A program made the translations under genes and the position numbers. A DNA stretch of 64,000 bases, from positions 248,001 through 312,000 of the IMG/VR virus record IMGVR_UViG_3300041411_000080, one strand, 5' to 3'. The notes under the pieces are model-generated. The model did not search any database. It saw only the letters and a program-made list of their open reading frames with translations, and was not told where the DNA came from. Positions 7,490 through 61,164 of the stretch are shown in pieces; positions within the stretch are counted from its first letter, which is position 1, and each line of letters begins with the position of its first letter.

Positions 7490-8301
7490 ATTAGTCCGTG
7501 CTCCGGGAATATAGCTGGTAGCATTACTACGGGGGCTTCAGCGAGAGTAGTTACTGTATCCTTGATACCATTGAAGGTTACGCGGGGCGCCATGTTACGA
7601 TAACGACTCTCGAACGTGGGGTTAGCGATCTCTTCTACCATAGCTTTATTAAGGGCTTGAGAATATACACCCCATGCTTGGTTAGTTTCTTGTTCTCGCA
7701 GTTCTTTCTTCCTCATCTCCCAACGAGCTAGGACTTCAGGTGAATCATTAATGATCATACCCTTAAGGTCATCTTCCTTAGGATCGTACGACTCAGCATT
7801 CTCTGGGCTTTCACCGAATACCAAGTAGTACGACTCATTGGTGTTGAGGGTATAAGATTCAACCTTCTCGATAGACTGACCTGCACGAGACAGGTCCTCT
7901 ATTACTGGAGAGAGCATCCCAGCCAAGTTACCGCACGCCATTGCAAACAGAGCCGATAAGTAACTCAGGGTTTGTGGGTTCTCGTTGATGTGATCCTGTA
8001 TAAGTTTGAATGAGTCATTTAGATAGTAGCTGAACTCAATAGCTTTTGGGTTCTGCATACCAGCATTGAATTGTAGGTAGTGTTCCAGTGCATCTTTGAG
8101 CAGTCCTTTAATAGACAACTCATCGTACGCCGTTAGAGTTCCTGTCTCATCGAAGAACTCAAGGTGTTGCGGATGACCGACTGGATAACGTGCTGTAGCA
8201 ACTTTGTATGCAGCATTACGAATCACGTCAGCCATCTGTGTTAACGTGTGTTCGATTTCATGATGGTTGATCATCATTCCGATTGTGCGTGATTGATTCA
8301 T
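7486..8301 (-). CDS. hypothetical protein with C-terminal tail-sheath-like peptide
   Basis: 271 aa; NMAPRVTFNGIKD resembles the sheath N-terminus. Confidence 0.85.
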   Translation of the reverse strand: MNQSRTIGMMINHHEIEHTLTQMADVIRNAAYKVATARYPVGHPQHLEFFDETGTLTAYDELSIKGLLKDALEHYLQFNAGMQNPKAIEFSYYLNDSFKLIQDHINENPQTLSYLSALFAMACGNLAGMLSPVIEDLSRAGQSIEKVESYTLNTNESYYLVFGESPENAESYDPKEDDLKGMIINDSPEVLARWEMRKKELREQETNQAWGVYSQALNKAMVEEIANPTFESRYRNMAPRVTFNGIKDTVTTLAEAPVVMLPAIFPEHGLI

Positions 8302-42424: not shown

Positions 42425-42452
42425 GTAATATAGGCTTATATTAGCTTCTAAT
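42425..42452 (-). promoter_or_regulatory. early promoter
   Basis: ATTAGAA-N13-TATATTAC. Confidence 0.8.
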
Positions 42453-42497: not shown

Positions 42498-44693
42498 ATG
42501 GATATGCTGCTTTTTGCTTCTGACTGGGACAGGTTCCATACCGCCCGAGCAGACTTTAATACGAAGAACACAACCTTCTTAAAACTCGCTCACTTGTATC
42601 GTGACGAACTTAAGATTAAGAATTGGAAGTTCCATCTGGCTCTGATGCAACCTGAACTATCGGGTGTCGATCCTTATGATGAGACCTTAGATATCACAAC
42701 GAAAGCTAAGATTGCTTTTGAATGTAAATGGAACCCATGGTATTACTTCCGTGAGGTATCCCGTATTCCCCAAGTCGGTTCGGTACCATCCCCGTTCTTG
42801 GCTAACCGTGGTAACATCGCGTTGTACTGGAGTTTCTTTAACCACATTAACTTCGGTCTACTGCAACCACGTCAAACTGGTAAGTCTGTATCAACGGACG
42901 TTCTGATGGTTGGCCTGATGTTCATCTGGGGCTTCAAGACAACTATTAACTTGATCACTAAAGACTCGAAACTGCGAGACGCCAACATTGAGCGACTCAA
43001 GGAGATGAGGGAACTCTTACCTGACTATATCGACATGGTTGACCGTAACGATGCGGACAACTCTGAGATGATGACTTGCACTCGTTTGGGTAACCGTTAT
43101 AAAACTTCGGTAGCTCGTAACGATAAGATCGCTGCGGATAAACTCGGTCGTGGTTTGACCGTACCTATCATGCAGTTCGACGAATTTGCATACATCAGTC
43201 GTATTGAGACTTCCCTGCCGGTAGCACTAGCTGCCGGATCTGCTGCCCGTGATAACGCCCGTAAAGCTAAACAGTTCTTCGGTAACATCTTCACTACAAC
43301 TGCTGGTGACATTACTACCCGAGATGGTAAGTACGCGCACGGCTTCATGACAGGTGGAGCTATCTGGTCTGAGACTTACTTTGACCTTCCTACTCAAGCT
43401 GCGGTTGAACTCGTGGTAGAGAAAGGGACTACAGGTAAGACGCCTCTGATCTACGGTGCATTTAACCACCGTCAGCTGGGCCGTGACGATCTATGGTTGT
43501 TCCGTACGCTGCGTGAATCTAGTTCCTTTGGTGAGATTGCTGACCGAGACTTCTTTAATATCTGGACTGTGGGTGGTGAAGGTTCTCCTCTGACACTTGA
43601 ACAGAAGAAGATCCTTAAAGAAGGTATGCGTGAGCCTAAGCACATCGAACAAAACGATGATGGTTACATCATGCGTTGGTACATCCCACAAAACGAGATC
43701 GCTTCTCGTATGGCTAACTGCCGTGTGGTAATGGGTTGTGACCCTAGTGAACTCCTCGGCGAAGATAACGACGCCACAGGTCTAGTAGGTATCGATACTG
43801 AAACTCACGAGATTCTGTTTGCTGGTCGTTATAATGAAACCAACGTAGCTACTCTGGCTAACTACATTGCTGACATCATTCTCAAGTATCCGGGTGTAAC
43901 ATGGGTACCAGAACGTAAGTCTACCGGTATTAGCTTGATCGACATCGTGATCCTGATTCTGCACTCAAGAGGCATCGACCCATTTCGTCGTATCTTCAAC
44001 CGTGTAGTCGACGAAGCACAACTCATGGAATCGGAATACGAAACTATCCGGGCAACTCCGGTTACTCAACGTACTCCACAGTTCTACGATCGATTCAAAC
44101 GTCACTTCGGATTCAACACCGCAGGTAGTGGTCGTTACTCGCGTAATGCTCTCTACAAAGATTCGCTGGGTAGTTCCGTGGATCTTGGTGGTCGGACTAT
44201 GAACGACAAACAACTCATTACTGAGATGCTCGCCCTTACGATTAAGAACGGTCGTATTGACCACAACAACGACGCACACGACGACATGTGTGTATCGATG
44301 CTGTTGGCTCACTGGGTATGTATCCGTGGTGAGAACTTGGACTTCTACGGTATCAACTCTAAGACGATCTTCTCTCGGGCTACTACACGAGATGTTGAGC
44401 AGACTAACGTTGAGATCTATCGTGACTCGCAATCACGTAAGTATAAAGAAGAGTTCGATATGCTGGTCGAGAAGCTTAAAGGTGAATCCAACAAAATGGT
44501 TATCACCAAACTCGAAATGCGTATCCGTGCTATTTCTCGTTGGATTGATGTGTCTGATGCTGGCGGCGTTGGTATCGATGCCTTGATTCGACAGGTCCAT
44601 GATGAACGTGTTCGTAAGGTTCGTTCTAACCGCTTCGGTGACGTAGTGCGTGAACAGAACCAACGCTTCCGTGGTAACGCTGTAATGATGTAA
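42498..44693 (+). CDS. terL: terminase large subunit (phiKZ gp25-like)
   Basis: Walker A PRQTGKS, Walker B IMQFDE, TTT coupling motif, nuclease GCDPSE and HDD. Confidence 0.92.
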   Translation: MDMLLFASDWDRFHTARADFNTKNTTFLKLAHLYRDELKIKNWKFHLALMQPELSGVDPYDETLDITTKAKIAFECKWNPWYYFREVSRIPQVGSVPSPFLANRGNIALYWSFFNHINFGLLQPRQTGKSVSTDVLMVGLMFIWGFKTTINLITKDSKLRDANIERLKEMRELLPDYIDMVDRNDADNSEMMTCTRLGNRYKTSVARNDKIAADKLGRGLTVPIMQFDEFAYISRIETSLPVALAAGSAARDNARKAKQFFGNIFTTTAGDITTRDGKYAHGFMTGGAIWSETYFDLPTQAAVELVVEKGTTGKTPLIYGAFNHRQLGRDDLWLFRTLRESSSFGEIADRDFFNIWTVGGEGSPLTLEQKKILKEGMREPKHIEQNDDGYIMRWYIPQNEIASRMANCRVVMGCDPSELLGEDNDATGLVGIDTETHEILFAGRYNETNVATLANYIADIILKYPGVTWVPERKSTGISLIDIVILILHSRGIDPFRRIFNRVVDEAQLMESEYETIRATPVTQRTPQFYDRFKRHFGFNTAGSGRYSRNALYKDSLGSSVDLGGRTMNDKQLITEMLALTIKNGRIDHNNDAHDDMCVSMLLAHWVCIRGENLDFYGINSKTIFSRATTRDVEQTNVEIYRDSQSRKYKEEFDMLVEKLKGESNKMVITKLEMRIRAISRWIDVSDAGGVGIDALIRQVHDERVRKVRSNRFGDVVREQNQRFRGNAVMM

Positions 44694-44741: not shown

Positions 44742-45197
44742 TTAAAGGTTGTACTCTCGGGTGAGGAGATCTTTGATCGCAGCAGGAGAGGGCTTTGTAG
44801 GCTGTTTGACCAGACGGTACAGAGTAACTCCAATCTCAATAGCTTTACGACGTGCAGGATTAACCCCAGCAACTTTCATTGACTCAAAGAAGATCTCATC
44901 GACCTCTTTACGATTCAACTTCCGTTTGGTAGTTTCCCAAGTCTCACAAAGCTTATCGTGAACGACAGCACATTGACCATGTTTACCCCAGACTGGAATC
45001 AACCACTGTAGGAACTTAGGTACACTAGCACCATCTGACAGATAACCTCTTGGGATGATAACCTTTTCAGTGTGGTCGTTATCCAAGTAATATTCAAACC
45101 CCGGATCAACCCACTTATAGTCACCACCTAAAATCTTAGAGGCTTCGTCAGCGTCGTGTGTTTGGAGTTCCCCTGAGAACCGCGTGAATGAAGACAT
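44742..45197 (-). CDS. DUF1353-family protein
   Basis: IP.GY.SDGASVP...AVVHD.L...R...D..F.E.M signature. Confidence 0.8.
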   Translation of the reverse strand: MSSFTRFSGELQTHDADEASKILGGDYKWVDPGFEYYLDNDHTEKVIIPRGYLSDGASVPKFLQWLIPVWGKHGQCAVVHDKLCETWETTKRKLNRKEVDEIFFESMKVAGVNPARRKAIEIGVTLYRLVKQPTKPSPAAIKDLLTREYNL

Positions 45198-45247
45198 GAT
45201 GCATTCCTTAGTTGGTTAGATACGAGAGAGCCTAAGCCCTCAACATA

Positions 45248-45811
45248 TCATTTCCGCTTAAGGTGGAAGAACTCAAACAGTTCATTACCAGTTTCACCAT
45301 CAAGACACGGCCAAGACTCCTTGACTTCCCAAGGAGGAATTACGGTATCGTGATGAGTGTAGGTCTCGAAGTTATAATCGAAATAAACCTTTTGATCTTC
45401 TGGGGTTGTGTTGTTATCACTAAGAGTACACCAGTTCATCTCGGACAGGTATACTTCATCTACGATCTTAACAGCTTCTTCGTAGATAGCCTTACCACCA
45501 ATGAAGATCAGCTCTTCAACCCCGTGTAGCTTACACCATTCTACTGCATCTGTAATGCTGGGTGAAACACAAGCTACACCATCCATACACTCAGTAGCGA
45601 GGTTTTGAGGGTTAGCCGTGATAACGATGTTCATCCGATTAGGGAGCGGTTTCTTAGGAAGAGATTCCCAAGTCTTCCGGCCCATTGCTATCGCCTTACC
45701 TTTAGTGATATCTTTGAAGTTGACCAGATCAGCTGGACACTTCCATGGGAGTTCATTGTTAATCCCAATGACGTTATCCATAGAACGAGCCAAGATCATA
45801 CTAAGCTTCAT
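45248..45811 (-). CDS. folA: dihydrofolate reductase
   Basis: VIG..NELPW..PADL..FK, MGRKTWESLP.KPLPNR.NIVIT, IGG. Confidence 0.95.
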   Translation of the reverse strand: MKLSMILARSMDNVIGINNELPWKCPADLVNFKDITKGKAIAMGRKTWESLPKKPLPNRMNIVITANPQNLATECMDGVACVSPSITDAVEWCKLHGVEELIFIGGKAIYEEAVKIVDEVYLSEMNWCTLSDNNTTPEDQKVYFDYNFETYTHHDTVIPPWEVKESWPCLDGETGNELFEFFHLKRK

Positions 45812-46355
45812 TCGATGCACCCTCATGGCTGTGCAGGGTGTAGCCAGTAGGACTATAGGTGAAGGTGTAGGACATATCGAACGTACCAGCTACGTCTTTG
45901 AACTCTGGACGCTGACCAGAGATAACTCGACTCAAGCTGAACTGCTGAATGAAATCGAACCCACCCAATGCAAAGGTGAACTCCTTATCCACACTACCCT
46001 CACGACGCAGAACGCCTTCTAGACGTACTGTACGAGCTTGGTGAAGTACGCTGATGCTGTACTCGATAACAGCCCAACCATCCAGACCCATAGTTACCAG
46101 ATCATCGATCCCATAAGCAGTTACGAGGTATTGGAGTGGAGTGATGTGAGGAGTTTCACGTTTGAGGTCAAGGATATTAACCAGACCATCCATCTGCTCA
46201 AAGGTAACGTCATGGATAACACCTTCTTCAGTCACCACTTTAAACGAACGTCTCAGCAACGTCTCGTTAGGGTTCTCAGAAGGGATCAGCAGATCACGGG
46301 CGATGTCATTCAGGATCTCAGAGTCGGCTACAACTGGTTTGGTAATCAGGGTCAT
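45801..46355 (-). CDS. probable phage-nucleus-associated protein ChmB (gp2-like)
   Basis: 184 aa directly upstream of DHFR, matching the recalled position and size of gp2/ChmB; not confirmed by alignment. Confidence 0.5.
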   Translation of the reverse strand: MTLITKPVVADSEILNDIARDLLIPSENPNETLLRRSFKVVTEEGVIHDVTFEQMDGLVNILDLKRETPHITPLQYLVTAYGIDDLVTMGLDGWAVIEYSISVLHQARTVRLEGVLRREGSVDKEFTFALGGFDFIQQFSLSRVISGQRPEFKDVAGTFDMSYTFTYSPTGYTLHSHEGASNEA

Positions 46356-46714
46356 GCGATGGGTTCCTTGTATGGGCCATAAAAGAATTCGAAGAGTTGT
46401 TGCTTATACACACTATACCCGAGGATACGTCCATTCTCACGGTAGTGAGTTACAATGTAATCTCCCGGACATACTTCACGGTCAGTGTCAGTTGGATGGT
46501 AGTAAACTGTACTGTTAATCATCCCATGCTCACCCATGTGTTTACTACAGATGGGACATACCAGCAGTGAGTCACTATGCGGTTTAAAGGTAGGATGACG
46601 CTGTACTATGCGTCCTGTGTTGATACGGTTGATTGTACGGTCTTCTGGATGGTCTCCATTACGGAACCATTGGTTAGCTTCCATTACTGGAAGTAAAGCG
46701 GAATAAAGAGCCAC
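46352..46714 (-). CDS. hypothetical protein with CxxC...HG motif
   Basis: QWFRNGDHP, CPICSKHMGEHG, VCPGDYI. Confidence 0.75.
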   Translation of the reverse strand: MALYSALLPVMEANQWFRNGDHPEDRTINRINTGRIVQRHPTFKPHSDSLLVCPICSKHMGEHGMINSTVYYHPTDTDREVCPGDYIVTHYRENGRILGYSVYKQQLFEFFYGPYKEPIA

Positions 46715-46768
46715 CTAGCGATACTCCAAAAATATCATTACATAAACTTAGTACAGCTGGGTATTCTG

Positions 46769-47362
46769 TTATTTCATTGGAGAGTAACTATCGAACGTTA
46801 CAACCGTCTTACTCGCAATGTTATCGCCTGAACCATGATGTTCTTGAATCACAGTACCAGCACCGAAGACTTGGTCATGAACAGCTTGCTGAAGATTAGT
46901 ACGAATACCATCTTTAATAATATCCATCATCTCACCAGCTAACTTCTTAGCCGCCTGTTCACATTCAGCCAGCTCCTTAGCGTAGTCCTTAGTGAAGATC
47001 TCTTGGATCATATCAGGCATGTGATCCATATTGCCCTCAAGATCCAACCAGCTCACGATAGGGGCTTTAGTCTCATCATCCCACTTAACCCCCAGACCCA
47101 TCACTTGGAAGAGCTTGGCTGCAAGTGTATAGCGTTCAACAGTTTCAGGAGGCGTCTTACGAAGACTATCCATGATCATGTCGTACATGAGCATCGTTTG
47201 ACCACTATTGCGGGGATAAACGTTACCGAGATGAAACGACTGGAGTGAACCACCGTTCAGACGTTCATCGGTTATGAACTTACCTGAAGGAATATCGAGC
47301 AATGCTCCAGCATTGAATTTAGGAGCTAGATGCTTTACGTGTTTCGCCAATTCTTTATTCAT
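46769..47362 (-). CDS. hypothetical protein resembling a degenerate UvsX/RecA fragment
   Basis: FNAGALLDIPSG..LNGG, WLDLEGN, FDSYS; GGAG RBS after early promoter. Confidence 0.7.
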   Translation of the reverse strand: MNKELAKHVKHLAPKFNAGALLDIPSGKFITDERLNGGSLQSFHLGNVYPRNSGQTMLMYDMIMDSLRKTPPETVERYTLAAKLFQVMGLGVKWDDETKAPIVSWLDLEGNMDHMPDMIQEIFTKDYAKELAECEQAAKKLAGEMMDIIKDGIRTNLQQAVHDQVFGAGTVIQEHHGSGDNIASKTVVTFDSYSPMK

Positions 47363-47399
47363 GATAACTCCAAAGTCATATTAAGGGAACTACACCAGT

Positions 47400-47427
47400 G
47401 TAATATAAATCTCAAATAAAATCTGCT
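47400..47427 (-). promoter_or_regulatory. early promoter
   Basis: TATATTAC core with AT-rich upstream. Confidence 0.7.
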
Positions 47428-47532
47428 AAACCTTATGCAAGAGGAAAGGATTCTAAAATATACTGACTGTTCAAAGACTATGTTAGAATCTATTTCAATC
47501 AAAACCATCAACACTAAAACTGGAAGTAAGAA

Positions 47533-49824
47533 ATGATCGAAACCATTATCAAACTGGACGGAACCGAAGAAGCCTTCAACGCCGCCAAGCCTAACCGCTG
47601 GATGGAATGGGGGGCTGAGAAACTTAAGGATAAGGTGGATTGGACTTCCATCGTAATGGAGGTAGCGGGTTCCTCCCCTAAGAAAGTAACTTCGCAAGTA
47701 TTCCAGATGTCTTTGATCGAACGTACATTGGCTGGTCGCACGTGGTCTCACTACATGTTGGCGGGTAAACTGTACGCAGCGTGGATTCACAAACACCTGT
47801 ATGGTTCTGACGGCATCCCTACCGTTAAAGCGTTGCACACTCGCATGCAACAAGACCGCTTGATGGTGAAACTGAATTACACCACCCAAGACTACATGAA
47901 GATCCAGAAGTTCATTAACCATGACCTGGACTTTGATCAACCACACTTCGCTCTTCACCAGATCCGCAAGAAATATGCTCTGGGTAACCGAGTTACAGGT
48001 AAAGAATATGAGTCGCCTCAATTTACGTACATGCGCATGGCAATGGCGCTTGCTGAGAACGAGCCTAAAGCAAACCGCATCCAAGTGGTTCGTGACTACT
48101 ACGAACTCTTTGCGCACAAGATGCTATCGGCACCTACCCCTAACTATATCAACCTCGGTACTGTACATCGGGGCTTCGCTAGCTGCTGCCTATTCGCATC
48201 TGGCGATAACGGTACTTCTCTGGCGATCGGGAACTTCATCGGCGACAAAATGACCCAGATGTCTGCGGGCATCGGCGTTAACATCATGACCCGATCCGTA
48301 GGCGATGCTGTACGTAACGGTCTGTTCCTGCACCACGGTAAGAAGAAGTATTACGATGCAATGGGTAAATCCATTGTGGCCAACATTCAAGCTGGTCGTG
48401 GTGGTGCTGTTACTTGCTTCTTTGAAGCATTCGATCAAGAAGTTGAGTTGATCCAAGCCCTGCGTAACCCACGTTCGACCGAAGACCGTCGTAACCGTGA
48501 TATGCACTTCGCTATGCTGGCTAACCGTCTGTTCGCTAAGAAAGCAGCTAAGGGTGAAGATATCTTCGCATTCAACCCGTACACTGCACCTGATCTGCAC
48601 GAAGCCTTCTACGGTAAAGACGTAGAACTGTTCGAAACACTTTACGCTAAATACGAAGCAGACGAGAAGTTCGTTAAGCATTACGCTTCGGCTCGTGAAG
48701 TTCTGAAGACCATGCTGAAAGAAGCTCAGGAAACTGGCGTAGCTTACGTGGGTCAGATTGACGAGATGAACCGTCACACCCCGTTCAAAGATCCTATCCG
48801 CAGTTCTAACCTGTGCATGGAAATCGCTGAGCCTACCGCTCCGTACTACGAGATGCCTGACCTGTTCTCTTCGGAAGACCATGGTCGTGGTGAGATCGCT
48901 ACTTGTTCGCTTGCAGCTGTATCGGTTGAGAACATCCCAGATCTGGCTACCTATAAGAAGGTTTGCTACTACGCTCTGAAGATGATCGACTACTGCATCC
49001 TGAATAGCTCTTACGTGTTCCCTCACTTGGAGTTCACCGCTAAGCAACGTATGAGTGCTGGCGTCGGTATCATGGGTCTGGCTACTCACCTGGCTAAGAA
49101 TGGTCTGAACTATACTTCGGACGCTGGTAAAGATGAGATGCACTTCATTGCTGAACGTCACATGTTCTGCTTGATCGAAGCTTCCCTGAAGATTTCGAAA
49201 GAACGTGGTCTGGCTCCATGGATGCATAAGACTCGCTGGCCTGAAGGTTGGTTGCCAATCGACACCTACAAGAAAGCTGTTGATACCATTAAGTCTGACG
49301 GTACTACATTCAGCAACCTGTTCAAGTGGGAAGACCTGCGCGCCCAGATCATCGAGAACGGCGGTATTGGTCACTCCGTACTGGCAGCTTACATGCCGGG
49401 TGAATCCAGCTCTAAAGCGCTTGGAGGAGCTAACAGCATCTATCCTGTACGTCGTCTGACTCTGTCTAAGAACGATCAGAACAATCACCTGTACTGGGCT
49501 GCTCCGTATGGTGATGATCCTGAAGTTAAGTACCAGTTCGCTTGGGATATTCCAACCAAGGACATGATCGACTGCTACGCTATCTTCCAGAAGTTCACAG
49601 ACCAAGCAATCTCTGCTGACCTGTATCGTCGTATCGTGGGTAACACCCAGATCGATATTAACGAACTGCTGAAAGAATACTTCTACATGGTTAAGATGGG
49701 GATGAAGTCTCGTTACTACTACAACACTGAAACCTCGTTGAACCTGTCGTTGGAAGCTATGGAATCTGCACACAGTAACATTACCGAAGACACTGACTGC
49801 GGTAGTGGTGCCTGCAAGATGTAA
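47533..49824 (+). CDS. nrdA: ribonucleotide reductase class Ia alpha subunit
   Basis: ESPQ..YMR, PTP, SCC, SNLCMEI, GVGIMGLA, YY, C-terminal CGSGAC. Confidence 0.95.
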   Translation: MIETIIKLDGTEEAFNAAKPNRWMEWGAEKLKDKVDWTSIVMEVAGSSPKKVTSQVFQMSLIERTLAGRTWSHYMLAGKLYAAWIHKHLYGSDGIPTVKALHTRMQQDRLMVKLNYTTQDYMKIQKFINHDLDFDQPHFALHQIRKKYALGNRVTGKEYESPQFTYMRMAMALAENEPKANRIQVVRDYYELFAHKMLSAPTPNYINLGTVHRGFASCCLFASGDNGTSLAIGNFIGDKMTQMSAGIGVNIMTRSVGDAVRNGLFLHHGKKKYYDAMGKSIVANIQAGRGGAVTCFFEAFDQEVELIQALRNPRSTEDRRNRDMHFAMLANRLFAKKAAKGEDIFAFNPYTAPDLHEAFYGKDVELFETLYAKYEADEKFVKHYASAREVLKTMLKEAQETGVAYVGQIDEMNRHTPFKDPIRSSNLCMEIAEPTAPYYEMPDLFSSEDHGRGEIATCSLAAVSVENIPDLATYKKVCYYALKMIDYCILNSSYVFPHLEFTAKQRMSAGVGIMGLATHLAKNGLNYTSDAGKDEMHFIAERHMFCLIEASLKISKERGLAPWMHKTRWPEGWLPIDTYKKAVDTIKSDGTTFSNLFKWEDLRAQIIENGGIGHSVLAAYMPGESSSKALGGANSIYPVRRLTLSKNDQNNHLYWAAPYGDDPEVKYQFAWDIPTKDMIDCYAIFQKFTDQAISADLYRRIVGNTQIDINELLKEYFYMVKMGMKSRYYYNTETSLNLSLEAMESAHSNITEDTDCGSGACKM

Positions 49825-60522: not shown

Positions 60523-61164
60523 ATGATCGAACTATTAATAGTTGAGGAAAAGATAGTAACTGGTCCTATTCCAGGTACTCCCACGCTTTTAGCGGGTAAC
60601 GATCAACTAGGTTGGTATGGTGAAGTGCCAGTAACAGATTTTATAAATGGTCCAGATCTAGCTACACGCGTGGGTCTAACTTTGGGTACTAGTCAAAACC
60701 CAACCGGAGCATGGCTAAAGTTTGCCTATCAAGGTAAAATACTTTTTATTGCTAAGCAAACATATCGCCACTCTATATCGATGGATGCTTTCCTCAATGC
60801 ACAGATTGCAACTGGCAATAGAACTGTAACCATAGGTGGTCGAACCTACCGGATAAGATTGATGACCGGTACTGACGGTGCAGGTGAACTGGTAACCGGT
60901 GGGGAATGGAATGCACTGATGTATCGCGTAGCTGCCGGTACACAAATTCCCGCTGAAGATAAGTGGGCGAACTACACCACATCTGAAATGAGTTATGGTT
61001 CAGGCGGCAATGGCTATATTACCTGGTGTCGTGAAGTTAGAGCCTCAGCAGGCGCTATATACGCCACACGTGGTAACGGCAGTATAACAGCCATCCATGG
61101 CTATACCAAAGCCACCGCATCTTTTCAATATGGTTGGCGACCAGTACTTGAGTTAGTTCCATGA
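60523..61164 (+). CDS. virion/tail-fibre-like protein, GWRPVLE family
   Basis: GWYGEV, WLKFAY, GEWNAL, YGWRPVLELVP. Confidence 0.75.
   Translation: MIELLIVEEKIVTGPIPGTPTLLAGNDQLGWYGEVPVTDFINGPDLATRVGLTLGTSQNPTGAWLKFAYQGKILFIAKQTYRHSISMDAFLNAQIATGNRTVTIGGRTYRIRLMTGTDGAGELVTGGEWNALMYRVAAGTQIPAEDKWANYTTSEMSYGSGGNGYITWCREVRASAGAIYATRGNGSITAIHGYTKATASFQYGWRPVLELVP

What the first reader, a model, noticed from the sequence alone, without database searches (positions are those of the whole stretch)
46769..47362. Miniature, apparently inactive UvsX/RecA look-alike under an early promoter
Seen: motifs FNAGALLDIPSGKF, LNGG, PRNSGQT (Walker A-like, Lys replaced by Gln), WLDLEGN and terminal VTFDSYS appear in RecA order within 197 aa. 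Recalled: phiKZ-family UvsX begins N.G.L.DIPTG...LNGG before its Walker A. Inference: pseudo-ATPase that caps RecA/UvsX filaments (anti-SOS) or decoys recombinase-sensing defences; a further member of the mimic set.
Basis: inference. Interest (0 to 1): 0.6.

Follow-up and report, generated by a model that had tools for sequence, protein, structure and literature searches.

The report
Truncated, ATPase-dead copy of phage UvsX
A nucleus-forming Pseudomonas jumbo phage carries, under an early promoter, a 197-residue cut-down copy of its own UvsX/RecA-type recombinase that has lost the ATP-binding lysine and all DNA-binding parts, so it most likely acts as a non-catalytic partner or regulator; its function has not been tested.

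Summary
The ORF is real: window 46769-47362, minus strand, 197 aa.

The window comes from a 320,858-bp jumbo phage related to 201phi2-1 and Viktualia. Its own UvsX-like recombinase (484 aa) lies outside the window.

Profile-profile comparison shows the small protein is collinear with the first ~180 residues of chimallivirus UvsX (hhalign probability 98.6%, E 7.8e-16). It has these features:
- An N-terminal motif equivalent to RecA's 'MAW' motif.
- A degenerate P-loop. The Walker A lysine column holds Lys in only 3 of 33 family members; here it is Gln55.
- A conserved Glu strand (W.D.EGN, aligned to UvsX YDTE).
- A Walker B-like hhhhDS strand, six residues before the stop codon.
- A family-specific insert of about 30 residues.
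- No region that could hold the DNA-binding loops.

The family is small (30 clusters, all 73-188 aa). It is absent from phiKZ and PhiPA3, sits next to nrdA, and evolves under relaxed purifying selection. Its promoter matches the 201phi2-1/phiKZ early type and is conserved upstream of orthologues.

No RecA fold was recovered from the AlphaFold models. The co-fold with UvsX gave no verdict.

The look-alike, 'inactive' and 'early' claims are supported. Filament capping, anti-SOS and decoy roles remain untested.

The parts
46769..47362 (-). ORF of 197 aa: a truncated, P-loop-degenerate paralogue of the phage UvsX-like recombinase. It belongs to phrog_35575 and is the orthologue of 201phi2-1 gp468.
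47393..47438 (-). Early-type promoter. Elements: conserved GCATAAGG box (47431-47438); weak -30 element TTTAGCAGA (47422-47430); -20 element TTTGAGA (47410-47416); -10 element TATATTAC (47400-47407); N4; GTG (47393-47395).
   Evidence: The TATATTAC motif occurs 7 times in the window against 2.05 expected. Other copies share the ATTAGAA-N4-TTTAA-N4-TATATTAC-N4-GTG context. The genome holds 13 TATATTACNNNNGTG sites, all on one strand, against 1 for the control. The motif is conserved upstream of 8 of 11 orthologous loci. Published consensus: PMC7058600; early class: PMC11512511.
47368..47371 (-). Ribosome-binding site GGAG, 5 nt before the ATG.
   Evidence: read directly
47246..47323 (-). Residues 14-39 (P.FN.G.LLDIPSGKF...LNGG). 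This is the equivalent of the RecA 'MAW' motif that precedes Walker A, and it is the part most like UvsX.
   Evidence: hhalign on residues 1-44 gives E 2.5e-12. hhalign on the small alignments gives 29 columns at probability 95%. tblastn against UvsX of other phages gives 38-43% identity. MAW definition: PMC6472873.
47195..47218 (-). Residues 49-56 (YPRNSGQT): a degenerate Walker A. Gln55 sits in the column of the UvsX Walker A Lys56.
   Evidence: Alignment. Column census: Lys in 3 of 33 members, otherwise P/R/F/H/S/Q/L.
47051..47149 (-). Residues 72-104 (P.T.ERY...MG..V.W....P.V): a family-specific insert of about 30 residues that UvsX lacks. It holds the family's invariant Arg77 and Pro101.
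   Evidence: A 28-column gap in UvsX in the hhalign alignment. Conservation. Modelled as a helix plus beta-hairpin at pLDDT about 90.
47030..47050 (-). Residues 105-111 (WLDLEGN): the strand that aligns with UvsX YDTE, which holds the catalytic-Glu position of RecA-type ATPases. Trp105 and Glu109 are each conserved in 32 of 33 members.
   Evidence: The UvsX YDTE aligns with T4 UvsX YDSE.
46865..46981 (-). Residues 128-166: a long predicted helix. Its length varies and it is much shorter in the 201phi2-1, Viktualia and Phabio orthologues.
46781..46804 (-). Residues 187-194 (VVTFDSYS): a Walker B-like hhhhDS strand that aligns with UvsX IDS[FL][ST]. The protein ends three residues later.
   Evidence: Asp191 is conserved in 28 of 30 members and Ser192 in 30 of 30.

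Best explanation
The gene encodes a non-catalytic, cut-down paralogue of the phage's own UvsX-like (RecA-superfamily) recombinase.

Shown:
- It is collinear with UvsX residues 1 to about 180.
- It keeps the short N-terminal segment, the MAW-type motif, the helix after the P-loop, the Glu strand and the Walker B Asp-Ser.
- It has lost the Walker A lysine.
- It stops six residues after the Walker B Asp, so it has no L1/L2 DNA-binding loops, no second half of the ATPase core and no C-terminal domain.
- It has gained a conserved insert of about 30 residues.
- It is kept as an intact, moderately constrained gene in one clade of nucleus-forming Pseudomonas jumbo phages.
- It is the first gene behind an early-type (virion RNA polymerase) promoter, divergent from nrdA. 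The full-length uvsX gene has no such promoter.

Inferred:
- It cannot hydrolyse ATP or pair DNA, yet it preserves the parts of the RecA core that it shares with UvsX. It therefore most likely works through protein-protein contacts of the RecA type with UvsX protomers.
- In this model it is an early-made accessory that restrains, chaperones or end-caps UvsX assembly, in the manner of Walker-less Rad51 paralogues or filament-end modulators.
- The family-specific insert would be its private functional surface.
For: Homology with UvsX:
- hhalign E 7.8e-16, query 1-178 against UvsX 1-184.
- Separate pieces align collinearly.
- Shuffle controls: none of 40 reach the real score.
- The HMM hits 48 of 48 UvsX N-termini.
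- BLASTP against the phage's own UvsX gives E 0.002.
- A genome search with a foreign UvsX finds only the phage's own uvsX and this ORF.
- The family profile finds only the UvsX N-terminus in phiKZ and PhiPA3.

The UvsX identity of the 484-aa protein:
- phrog_97, E 5e-57.
- The Walker A/YDSE stretch aligns to T4 UvsX 3io5.
- Literature on phiKZ gp152/Nlp1.

Loss of the catalytic Lys with retention of Glu and Asp-Ser.

A real gene under selection:
- 30 clusters of short proteins.
- dN/dS 0.22-0.52, against 0.05 for nrdA.
- Conserved synteny.

Early promoter. There is no such motif before uvsX. UvsX is reported to be transcribed inside the nucleus.
Against: - No direct evidence of any interaction. 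The one co-fold gave no verdict.
- The AlphaFold models (pLDDT 67 and 71) show a helical core with a hairpin. The C-terminal tail (169-197) stays under pLDDT 50 in both models; the N-terminal motif is under 50 in the first and only about 55-74 in the second. This is not a RecA alpha/beta sheet, and no fold search returns RecA.
- Beyond residue about 73 the similarity rests mainly on two short motif blocks. Block-shuffled controls reach scores of 33, against 38-40 for the real order. With small alignments and default settings only 29 columns aligned.
- A RecA core cut after Walker B may not fold canonically.
- The conserved position beside nrdA and DHFR could point to a role unrelated to recombination.
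Confidence: 0.45

Rival explanations
1. A neofunctionalised remnant. The protein descends from UvsX but no longer has anything to do with recombination. Its conserved insert and helical core serve another early function, for instance in the nucleotide-supply gene block (nrdA, nrdB, DHFR) where it always sits, or in host take-over.
For: - Conserved divergent arrangement with nrdA, and an apparent operon with orf120, orf184 and DHFR.
- The family-specific insert holds the only invariant residues.
- The predicted structure is not RecA-like.
- It evolves fast, which is typical of accessory genes.
Against: - The segments shared with UvsX (MAW-type motif, Glu strand, Asp-Ser strand) are among the best conserved parts of the family. 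A function unrelated to the RecA architecture or to UvsX would not readily explain this.
- In Phabio and one metagenomic contig the gene is not next to nrdA.
Confidence: 0.27
2. An import-pathway player. The module shared with UvsX is what the phage's cargo-specific import route recognises (in phiKZ, UvsX/Nlp1 uniquely needs Imp2, plus Imp1). The small protein would then either be carried into the phage nucleus by that route or compete with UvsX for it.
For: - UvsX import needs a dedicated adaptor in phiKZ and PhiPA3.
- This phage has an Imp2 homologue.
- The strongest similarity between the small protein and UvsX is the N-terminal module.
- The small protein is made from an early promoter, before UvsX.
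Against: - In RecA the MAW motif is buried in the hydrophobic core and is not a surface epitope.
- The small protein is not related to Imp2.
- No UvsX surface recognised by Imp2 has been mapped in the texts read here.
Confidence: 0.1
3. One reading: it poisons host RecA filaments (anti-SOS), or it acts as a decoy or inhibitor for a host defence that senses phage recombinases.
For: - Early expression fits an anti-host function.
- Fast evolution fits as well.
- Dominant-negative inactive RecA variants are known to interfere with wild-type RecA (PMC6472873 discussion).
Against: - There is no detectable similarity to bacterial RecA in Pfam or PDB searches.
- Even the parent UvsX is barely alignable to T4 UvsX.
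- There is no hit in PADLOC models.
- These phages are reported to degrade the host genome, so blocking SOS would gain little (text).
Confidence: 0.1
4. Chance or convergent motif similarity: the protein is not related to UvsX at all.
For: - No RecA-like fold was recovered.
- No UvsX appears among the hits of the 1.8-billion-protein profile search at E <= 0.001.
Against: - hhalign E 7.8e-16, with a collinear order of five motifs.
- Independent pieces land in register.
- Shuffles and neighbouring-ORF controls fail.
- 48 of 48 UvsX are hit at the same place.
Confidence: 0.03

Closest known systems
Chimallivirus UvsX-like recombinase (phiKZ gp152/Nlp1; this phage's 484-aa protein at genome 125143-126597, locus L010:1474-2928)
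   Same: - Collinear N-terminal ~180 residues: the MAW-type motif N.G.L.DIPTG...LNGG, the helix after the P-loop, the Glu strand and the Walker B I-D-S.
- Encoded in the same genomes.
   Different: - 197 aa against 484 aa.
- Walker A Lys lost.
- An insert of about 30 residues.
- Nothing after Walker B.
- Different PHROG: 35575 against 97.
- Early-type promoter, which uvsX lacks.
- Found only in the 201phi2-1/Phabio-like clade, whereas UvsX is found throughout the family.
RecA / T4 UvsX (canonical RecA-superfamily recombinases)
   Same: The order of core motifs is the same: MAW, Walker A position, Glu strand, Walker B (PMC6472873 for the E. coli motif positions; T4 UvsX alignment of the parent protein).
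   Different: - No direct sequence or profile hit to RecA or UvsX in Pfam or PDB.
- No ATP-binding lysine.
- No DNA-binding loops.
- No RecA fold recovered from the models.
Walker-motif-less Rad51 paralogues such as yeast Csm2-Psy3 (Shu complex), and core-only phage RecA relatives such as Sak4. This comparison rests on my own knowledge and was not tested here.
   Same: They are small RecA-superfamily derivatives. They work with, rather than as, the main recombinase, and the ATPase motifs are lost in Csm2/Psy3.
   Different: - Those proteins keep a complete RecA-like core domain, whereas this one stops at Walker B.
- Sak4 keeps active Walker motifs.
- No evidence of relatedness beyond the superfamily.
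Recombinase filament modulators: RecX, DinI, PsiB, the BRC repeats of BRCA2 and T4 UvsY. This comparison rests on my own knowledge.
   Same: They represent the proposed mode of action: a small protein that binds recombinase protomers or filament ends.
   Different: Most are unrelated in sequence to the recombinase they control. Here the candidate modulator is itself derived from the recombinase.
phiKZ Imp2 (gp47), the cargo-specific adaptor for UvsX/Nlp1 nuclear import
   Same: - Similar size (178 aa).
- Restricted to Pseudomonas nucleus-forming phages.
- Functionally tied to UvsX.
   Different: - No sequence relationship: hhalign probability 0.2%.
- This phage has its own Imp2 homologue elsewhere in the window, so the small protein is not a replacement for it.

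Membership tests
RecA/UvsX-type recombinase (functional member) | Walker A GxxxxGK[T/S] with the ATP-binding lysine | tested here: not met
   Gln55 aligns with UvsX Lys56. The column holds Lys in only 3 of 33 family members.
RecA/UvsX-type recombinase (functional member) | MAW-type motif directly before Walker A | tested here: met
   Residues 14-39. hhalign E 2.5e-12 for residues 1-44. Asp23, Ile24, Pro25, Gly27, Asn36, Gly37 and Gly38 are conserved. Motif definition.
RecA/UvsX-type recombinase (functional member) | Catalytic-Glu strand and Walker B hhhhD | tested here: met
   Glu109 (32 of 33) aligns with UvsX Glu82. Asp191 (28 of 30) and Ser192 (30 of 30) align with UvsX Asp168 and Ser169. 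This part of the alignment is weaker, at E about 1e-5, and depends on motif blocks.
RecA/UvsX-type recombinase (functional member) | DNA-binding loops L1/L2, the second half of the ATPase core and the C-terminal region | tested here: not met
   The protein ends six residues after the Walker B Asp. The downstream ORFs are not the missing half.
RecA/UvsX-type recombinase (functional member) | RecA alpha/beta fold | tested here: inconclusive
   The AlphaFold models (pLDDT 67 and 71) have low-confidence N- and C-terminal parts; the C-terminal tail is under pLDDT 50 in both. Foldseek PDB, VIA-align wide, BFVD and Atlas return no RecA-like match. The best Z is 5.3, which is nonspecific.
RecA/UvsX-type recombinase (functional member) | ssDNA-dependent ATPase, filament formation and strand exchange | not testable with these tools
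   Biochemistry is needed. From the sequence, ATPase and DNA pairing are not expected.
phrog_97 (UvsX-like recombinase family) | A match to the family HMM | tested here: not met
   At E <= 1 the only match is phrog_35575 (E 2.6e-22, unknown function). The phage's own UvsX matches phrog_97 at E 5e-57.
UvsX-derived paralogue (relationship by descent) | Significant, collinear profile-profile similarity to UvsX that exceeds controls | tested here: met
phiKZ Imp2 import adaptors | Sequence similarity to phiKZ gp47 | tested here: not met
   hhalign probability 0.2%, E 0.26.
201phi2-1/phiKZ-type early promoter | Conserved -10 TATATTAC with -20 TTTRARR and -30 TTAWTAVAA elements, and a downstream GTG | tested here: met
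   The -10 element, the -20 element and the GTG match the consensus; the -30 element is weak. Strand-exclusive genome distribution of 13:0. Conserved upstream of orthologues, including 201phi2-1 gp468. Timing itself was not measured.
Recombinase filament cap or regulator (functional class) | Physical binding to UvsX or RecA | not testable with these tools
   The only co-fold returned no verdict and counts neither way.

The most novel reading that the evidence does not exclude
Nucleus-forming jumbo phages of the 201phi2-1/Phabio clade have turned the front half of their recombinase into an early-expressed pseudo-enzyme. It controls when and where UvsX can assemble, either by occupying UvsX subunit interfaces in the cytoplasm or by gating its dedicated import into the phage nucleus. 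This would be a phage counterpart of eukaryotic Rad51-paralogue or BRC-type control of a recombinase.
Probability: 0.2. Interest if true: 0.7.

Novelty: new variant of a known kind. Interest (0 to 1): 0.5.

Why it matters
[quoted passage not shown] It is also a fitness-conferring recombinase that lets phiKZ survive the NucC nuclease of CBASS.

A recombinase-derived, ATPase-dead mini-paralogue that is made early and kept in a whole clade would be a natural handle on two questions: how these phages regulate recombination or repair, and how they recognise UvsX as cargo. It would also be a clear phage example of a pseudo-enzyme regulator.

The family currently has no annotation (phrog_35575, no Pfam). 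I found no paper mentioning the 201phi2-1 orthologue gp468.

If the protein turns out to be unrelated to UvsX function, the finding shrinks to an annotation: 'UvsX N-terminal-like protein'.

Tried and rejected
- **Pfam scans.** The ORF and all 36 family members give nothing meaningful.
- **PADLOC.** No hit.
- **PDB sequence and profile searches with the small protein.** Only noise: MutH at E 0.14, UTP18 at E 0.017 on an acidic helix, and PHIKZ034 at E 0.25. I rejected these as chance.
- **Two AlphaFold2 models and fold searches.** I ran two Foldseek PDB searches, two VIA-align wide searches, one BFVD search and one ESM Atlas shape search, plus the Atlas feature search. They returned only the protein's own orthologues (201phi2-1, Phabio) or nonspecific helical matches.
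- **Co-fold of the small protein with the phage's own UvsX.** Score 0.02, no verdict. This is evidence neither for nor against binding.
- **The idea that the protein is a homologue or replacement of the UvsX import adaptor Imp2.** Rejected: there is no similarity to phiKZ gp47, and a separate Imp2 homologue exists in this genome and in 201phi2-1, Viktualia, Phabio and PhiPA3.
- **The idea of a split uvsX whose second half is encoded downstream.** Rejected: orf120 and orf184 show no similarity to UvsX.
- **Expression data.** No RNA run holds the region. The DNA occurs in rhizosphere, soil and plant metagenomes. I did not use read laying, because contigs cannot show expression.
- **Supplementary TSS tables of the 201phi2-1 transcriptome paper.** Not held.

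Full report
**What is there**

The finding's coordinates hold an intact ORF on the minus strand: 46769-47362, 197 aa, ATG start, with GGAG five bases upstream.

The window belongs to a 320,858-bp virus record with direct terminal repeats (window = bases 248001-312000). Its nearest named relatives are the nucleus-forming Pseudomonas jumbo phages Viktualia and 201phi2-1, at 78-79% DNA identity over terminase and nrdA.

The neighbourhood is as follows:
- terminase large subunit (42498-44693, +)
- a DUF1353 protein (44742-45197, -)
- DHFR (45248-45826, -)
- two small conserved ORFs (45801-46355 and 46352-46714, -)
- this ORF
- the ribonucleotide reductase large subunit, transcribed divergently (47533-49824, +)

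**Family**

Pfam gives nothing for this protein. PHROGs places it in phrog_35575, of unknown function.

Orthologues are 201phi2-1 gp468, a Viktualia hypothetical protein and Phabio gp014. The word search found seven metagenomic proteins.

The exhaustive profile search of 1.8 billion representatives found only 30 clusters. All are short proteins of 73-188 aa.

The 36-sequence alignment shows these conserved blocks:
- an N-terminal block P.FN.G.LFDIPTGKF...LNGG
- a helix
- a strongly conserved block P.T.ERY...MG..V.W....P.V.W.D.EGN, with Arg77 and Pro101 invariant
- I.D.L.KDY
- a region of variable length
- a hydrophobic strand ending in IDS.S, a few residues before the stop codon

**Relationship to UvsX**

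A degenerate-pattern scan of IMG/VR with the family alignment pulled out two 486-502-aa proteins as well as true orthologues. Their N-termini read N.GALLDIPTGKF...G.GN.FK[ST]. These proteins match phrog_97, 'UvsX-like recombinase'.

The window's own genome encodes one such protein, of 484 aa, at genome bases 125143-126597. It matches phrog_97 at E 5e-57, and its Walker A and YDTE stretch aligns to T4 UvsX, PDB 3io5. In phiKZ the homologue is gp152/Nlp1, which is described as a UvsX/RecA homologue.

Searching the window's genome with a foreign UvsX returns exactly two places: the uvsX gene, and the N-terminus of this ORF at 44% identity over residues 14-71. BLASTP of the ORF against its own UvsX gives E 0.002 over residues 5-72.

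Profile-profile results:
- With small alignments and default settings, 29 columns align at probability 95%.
- With 36 family members against 48 UvsX, hhalign gives probability 98.6% and E 7.8e-16 over query 1-178 and UvsX 1-184.
- The pieces behave independently. Residues 1-44 give E 2.5e-12. Residues 45-197 land on UvsX 51-178 at E 3e-5. Residues 100-197 land on UvsX 79-178 at E 1.1e-5.

Controls:
- Reversed and column-shuffled queries score 14-20, against 38-40 for the real order.
- Shuffles that keep 12-column blocks reach at most 33. Much of the C-terminal signal therefore comes from two motif blocks, with the correct order adding the rest. None of 40 shuffles of either kind reaches the real score.
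- The two downstream ORFs, used as negative controls, give E 0.02-0.07 against the same UvsX alignment.
- An HMM of the family hits all 48 UvsX at their N-termini, HMM positions about 9-73.
- In the complete genomes of phiKZ, PhiPA3 and two relatives, the family profile finds only the UvsX N-terminus. Those phages therefore lack the small gene.

**Anatomy by the alignment**

- Residues 14-39 correspond to the segment that in E. coli RecA is called the MAW motif (42[24 protein letters not shown]65), directly before Walker A.
- YPRNSGQT occupies the Walker A position, with Gln55 in the column of the UvsX lysine. Across 33 distinct family members that column is P/R/F/H/S/K/Q/L, with Lys only three times. 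The P-loop is therefore dead family-wide, not only in this protein.
- A 28-column block (residues about 72-104) has no counterpart in UvsX.
- WLDLEGN aligns with the UvsX strand YDTE, which is T4 UvsX YDSE. Trp105 and Glu109 are each conserved in 32 of 33 members.
- The C-terminal VVTFDSYS aligns with the UvsX Walker B I-D-S. Asp191 is conserved in 28 of 30 and Ser192 in 30 of 30.
- The protein then ends. There is no room for the L1/L2 loops, the remaining strands of the core or the C-terminal region.

'Miniature, apparently inactive UvsX look-alike' is therefore an accurate description, and the likeness is by descent.

**Structure**

- AlphaFold2 with 12 sequences gave pLDDT 67; with 36 sequences it gave pLDDT 71.
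- In both models the confident core is residues about 55-166: two helices, a hairpin, a short helix and a 40-residue helix.
- In the better model the N-terminal motif forms a weakly supported hairpin. The last 29 residues are disordered.
- No fold search returned a RecA-like protein. Only the BFVD models of the 201phi2-1 and Phabio orthologues matched.

I treat the fold as unresolved. Either the half-core has been remodelled, or the terminal segments need a partner, or the alignments are too shallow.

**Expression signals**

Thirty-seven bases before the ATG lies TATATTAC (47400-47407, -). It is preceded by TTTGAGA and followed by N4-GTG.
- The octamer occurs 7 times in the window, against 2.05 expected.
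- Five other copies share ATTAGAA-N4-TTTAA-N4-TATATTAC-N4-GTG and sit upstream of start codons.
- In the whole genome, TATATTACNNNNGTG occurs 13 times, all on one strand, against one hit for the control pattern.

The pattern equals the predicted 201phi2-1 promoter consensus and the phiKZ TATATTAC listed in PMC7058600. The 201phi2-1 transcriptome study assigns this AT-rich motif, conserved at -10, -20 and -30, to early genes. The element is conserved upstream of the orthologues in 8 of 11 loci, including 201phi2-1 gp468.

The full-length uvsX gene has no such motif. UvsX is reported to be transcribed inside the nucleus, that is, later.

Timing has not been measured for this gene. No RNA data exist for this phage, which is seen in rhizosphere, soil and plant metagenomes.

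**Selection and context**

Against two relatives, dN/dS is 0.22-0.52. The values are 0.05 for nrdA, 0.06-0.08 for terminase and 0.05-0.28 for the two small neighbours. The gene is therefore constrained but fast-evolving.

The arrangement nrdA (divergent), this gene, orf120, orf184, DHFR recurs in distant members. In Phabio and one contig the gene instead sits inside a run of small genes.

**How it most likely works**

Shown: the protein cannot be an ATPase or a recombinase. It is nevertheless kept, and the best conserved parts include those it shares with UvsX.

Inferred: it acts through RecA-type protein contacts with UvsX, as an early-made restraining, chaperoning or end-capping subunit. The family-specific insert would be its own functional surface. 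I put this at roughly 0.45, taking the identity (about 0.85-0.9) and the mechanism (about 0.3) together.

Rivals:
- A function unrelated to recombination, in the nucleotide-metabolism block or in host take-over (0.27).
- A role in, or competition for, the UvsX-specific import route. phiKZ Nlp1 uniquely needs Imp2. The protein is not an Imp2 homologue, and the phage has its own Imp2 homologue (0.10).
This is weakened by the absence of any similarity to bacterial RecA.
- Chance resemblance (0.03).

The single co-fold with UvsX gave no verdict and is not used as evidence either way.

**Comparison and novelty**

The protein works, at best, like Walker-less Rad51 paralogues or small filament modulators. 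That comparison rests on my own knowledge and was not tested.

It is not a functional member of the RecA/UvsX recombinases, because two defining features fail: the Walker A lysine and the DNA-binding half. It is a derived paralogue of the chimallivirus UvsX.

I found no publication on 201phi2-1 gp468 or on truncated UvsX paralogues in jumbo phages. I rate it a new variant of a known kind, of moderate interest. The identity is solid, the function is open, and it is directly testable in the 201phi2-1 system.

Noticed in passing
window 7807-8124 (-) (genome 255807-256124): A homologue of phiKZ Imp2 (gp47), the adaptor needed for nuclear import of UvsX/Nlp1. It matches at E 6.8e-10 over Imp2 residues 63-168, inside a 280-aa open frame that is longer than phiKZ Imp2 (178 aa). 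Homologues were also found in 201phi2-1, Viktualia, Phabio and PhiPA3.
   Followed up: partly
window 6133, 25711, 42425, 50369, 52622 (all -); whole genome: Five further early-type promoters share the full ATTAGAA-N4-TTTAA-N4-TATATTAC-N4-GTG pattern (at 42425 with TATAA and ATG in place of TTTAA and GTG). Genome-wide, all 13 TATATTACNNNNGTG sites lie on the same strand. The + strand octamer at 61015 lacks the upstream elements and is probably a chance match.
   Followed up: partly
window 47431-47438 (-): A GCATAAGG box just upstream of the promoter's -30 region is conserved in nearly all orthologous loci. It could be an extra regulatory element of the nrdA/mini-UvsX divergent region.
   Followed up: no
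window 46352-46714 (-) and 45801-46355 (-): Two conserved small ORFs follow the mini-UvsX in the same orientation. One is 120 aa, with a CPxC...C pattern and only weak Zn-finger-like hits. The other is 184 aa, phrog_16439. Their ends overlap and they are followed by DHFR, which suggests one early operon. Neither is related to UvsX.
   Followed up: partly
UvsX set, loci L010-L091: The mini-family HMM scores highest on UvsX of distant chimallivirus clades (for example L057, L061 and L062, at 28 bits) and lower on the phage's own UvsX (19 bits). This suggests an old duplication or acquisition from another lineage, not a recent copy.
   Followed up: no
UvsX N-termini (listing): Many chimallivirus UvsX start with an aromatic F-x-x-A-P type segment only about 10-15 residues before the MAW-type motif. 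There is no long N-terminal helix as in RecA or T4 UvsX. The mini family has a conserved L-F at a similar distance. This could be the polymerisation element, but that was not tested.
   Followed up: no
window 44742-45197 (-): A DUF1353 protein (Pfam E 2e-21) that PHROGs labels 'tail assembly chaperone' sits between the terminase and DHFR genes.
   Followed up: no
window 45200-48200: Near-identical DNA occurs in rhizosphere, soil, plant, leaf, freshwater and food metagenomes from 13 studies. No RNA run holds it.
   Followed up: no
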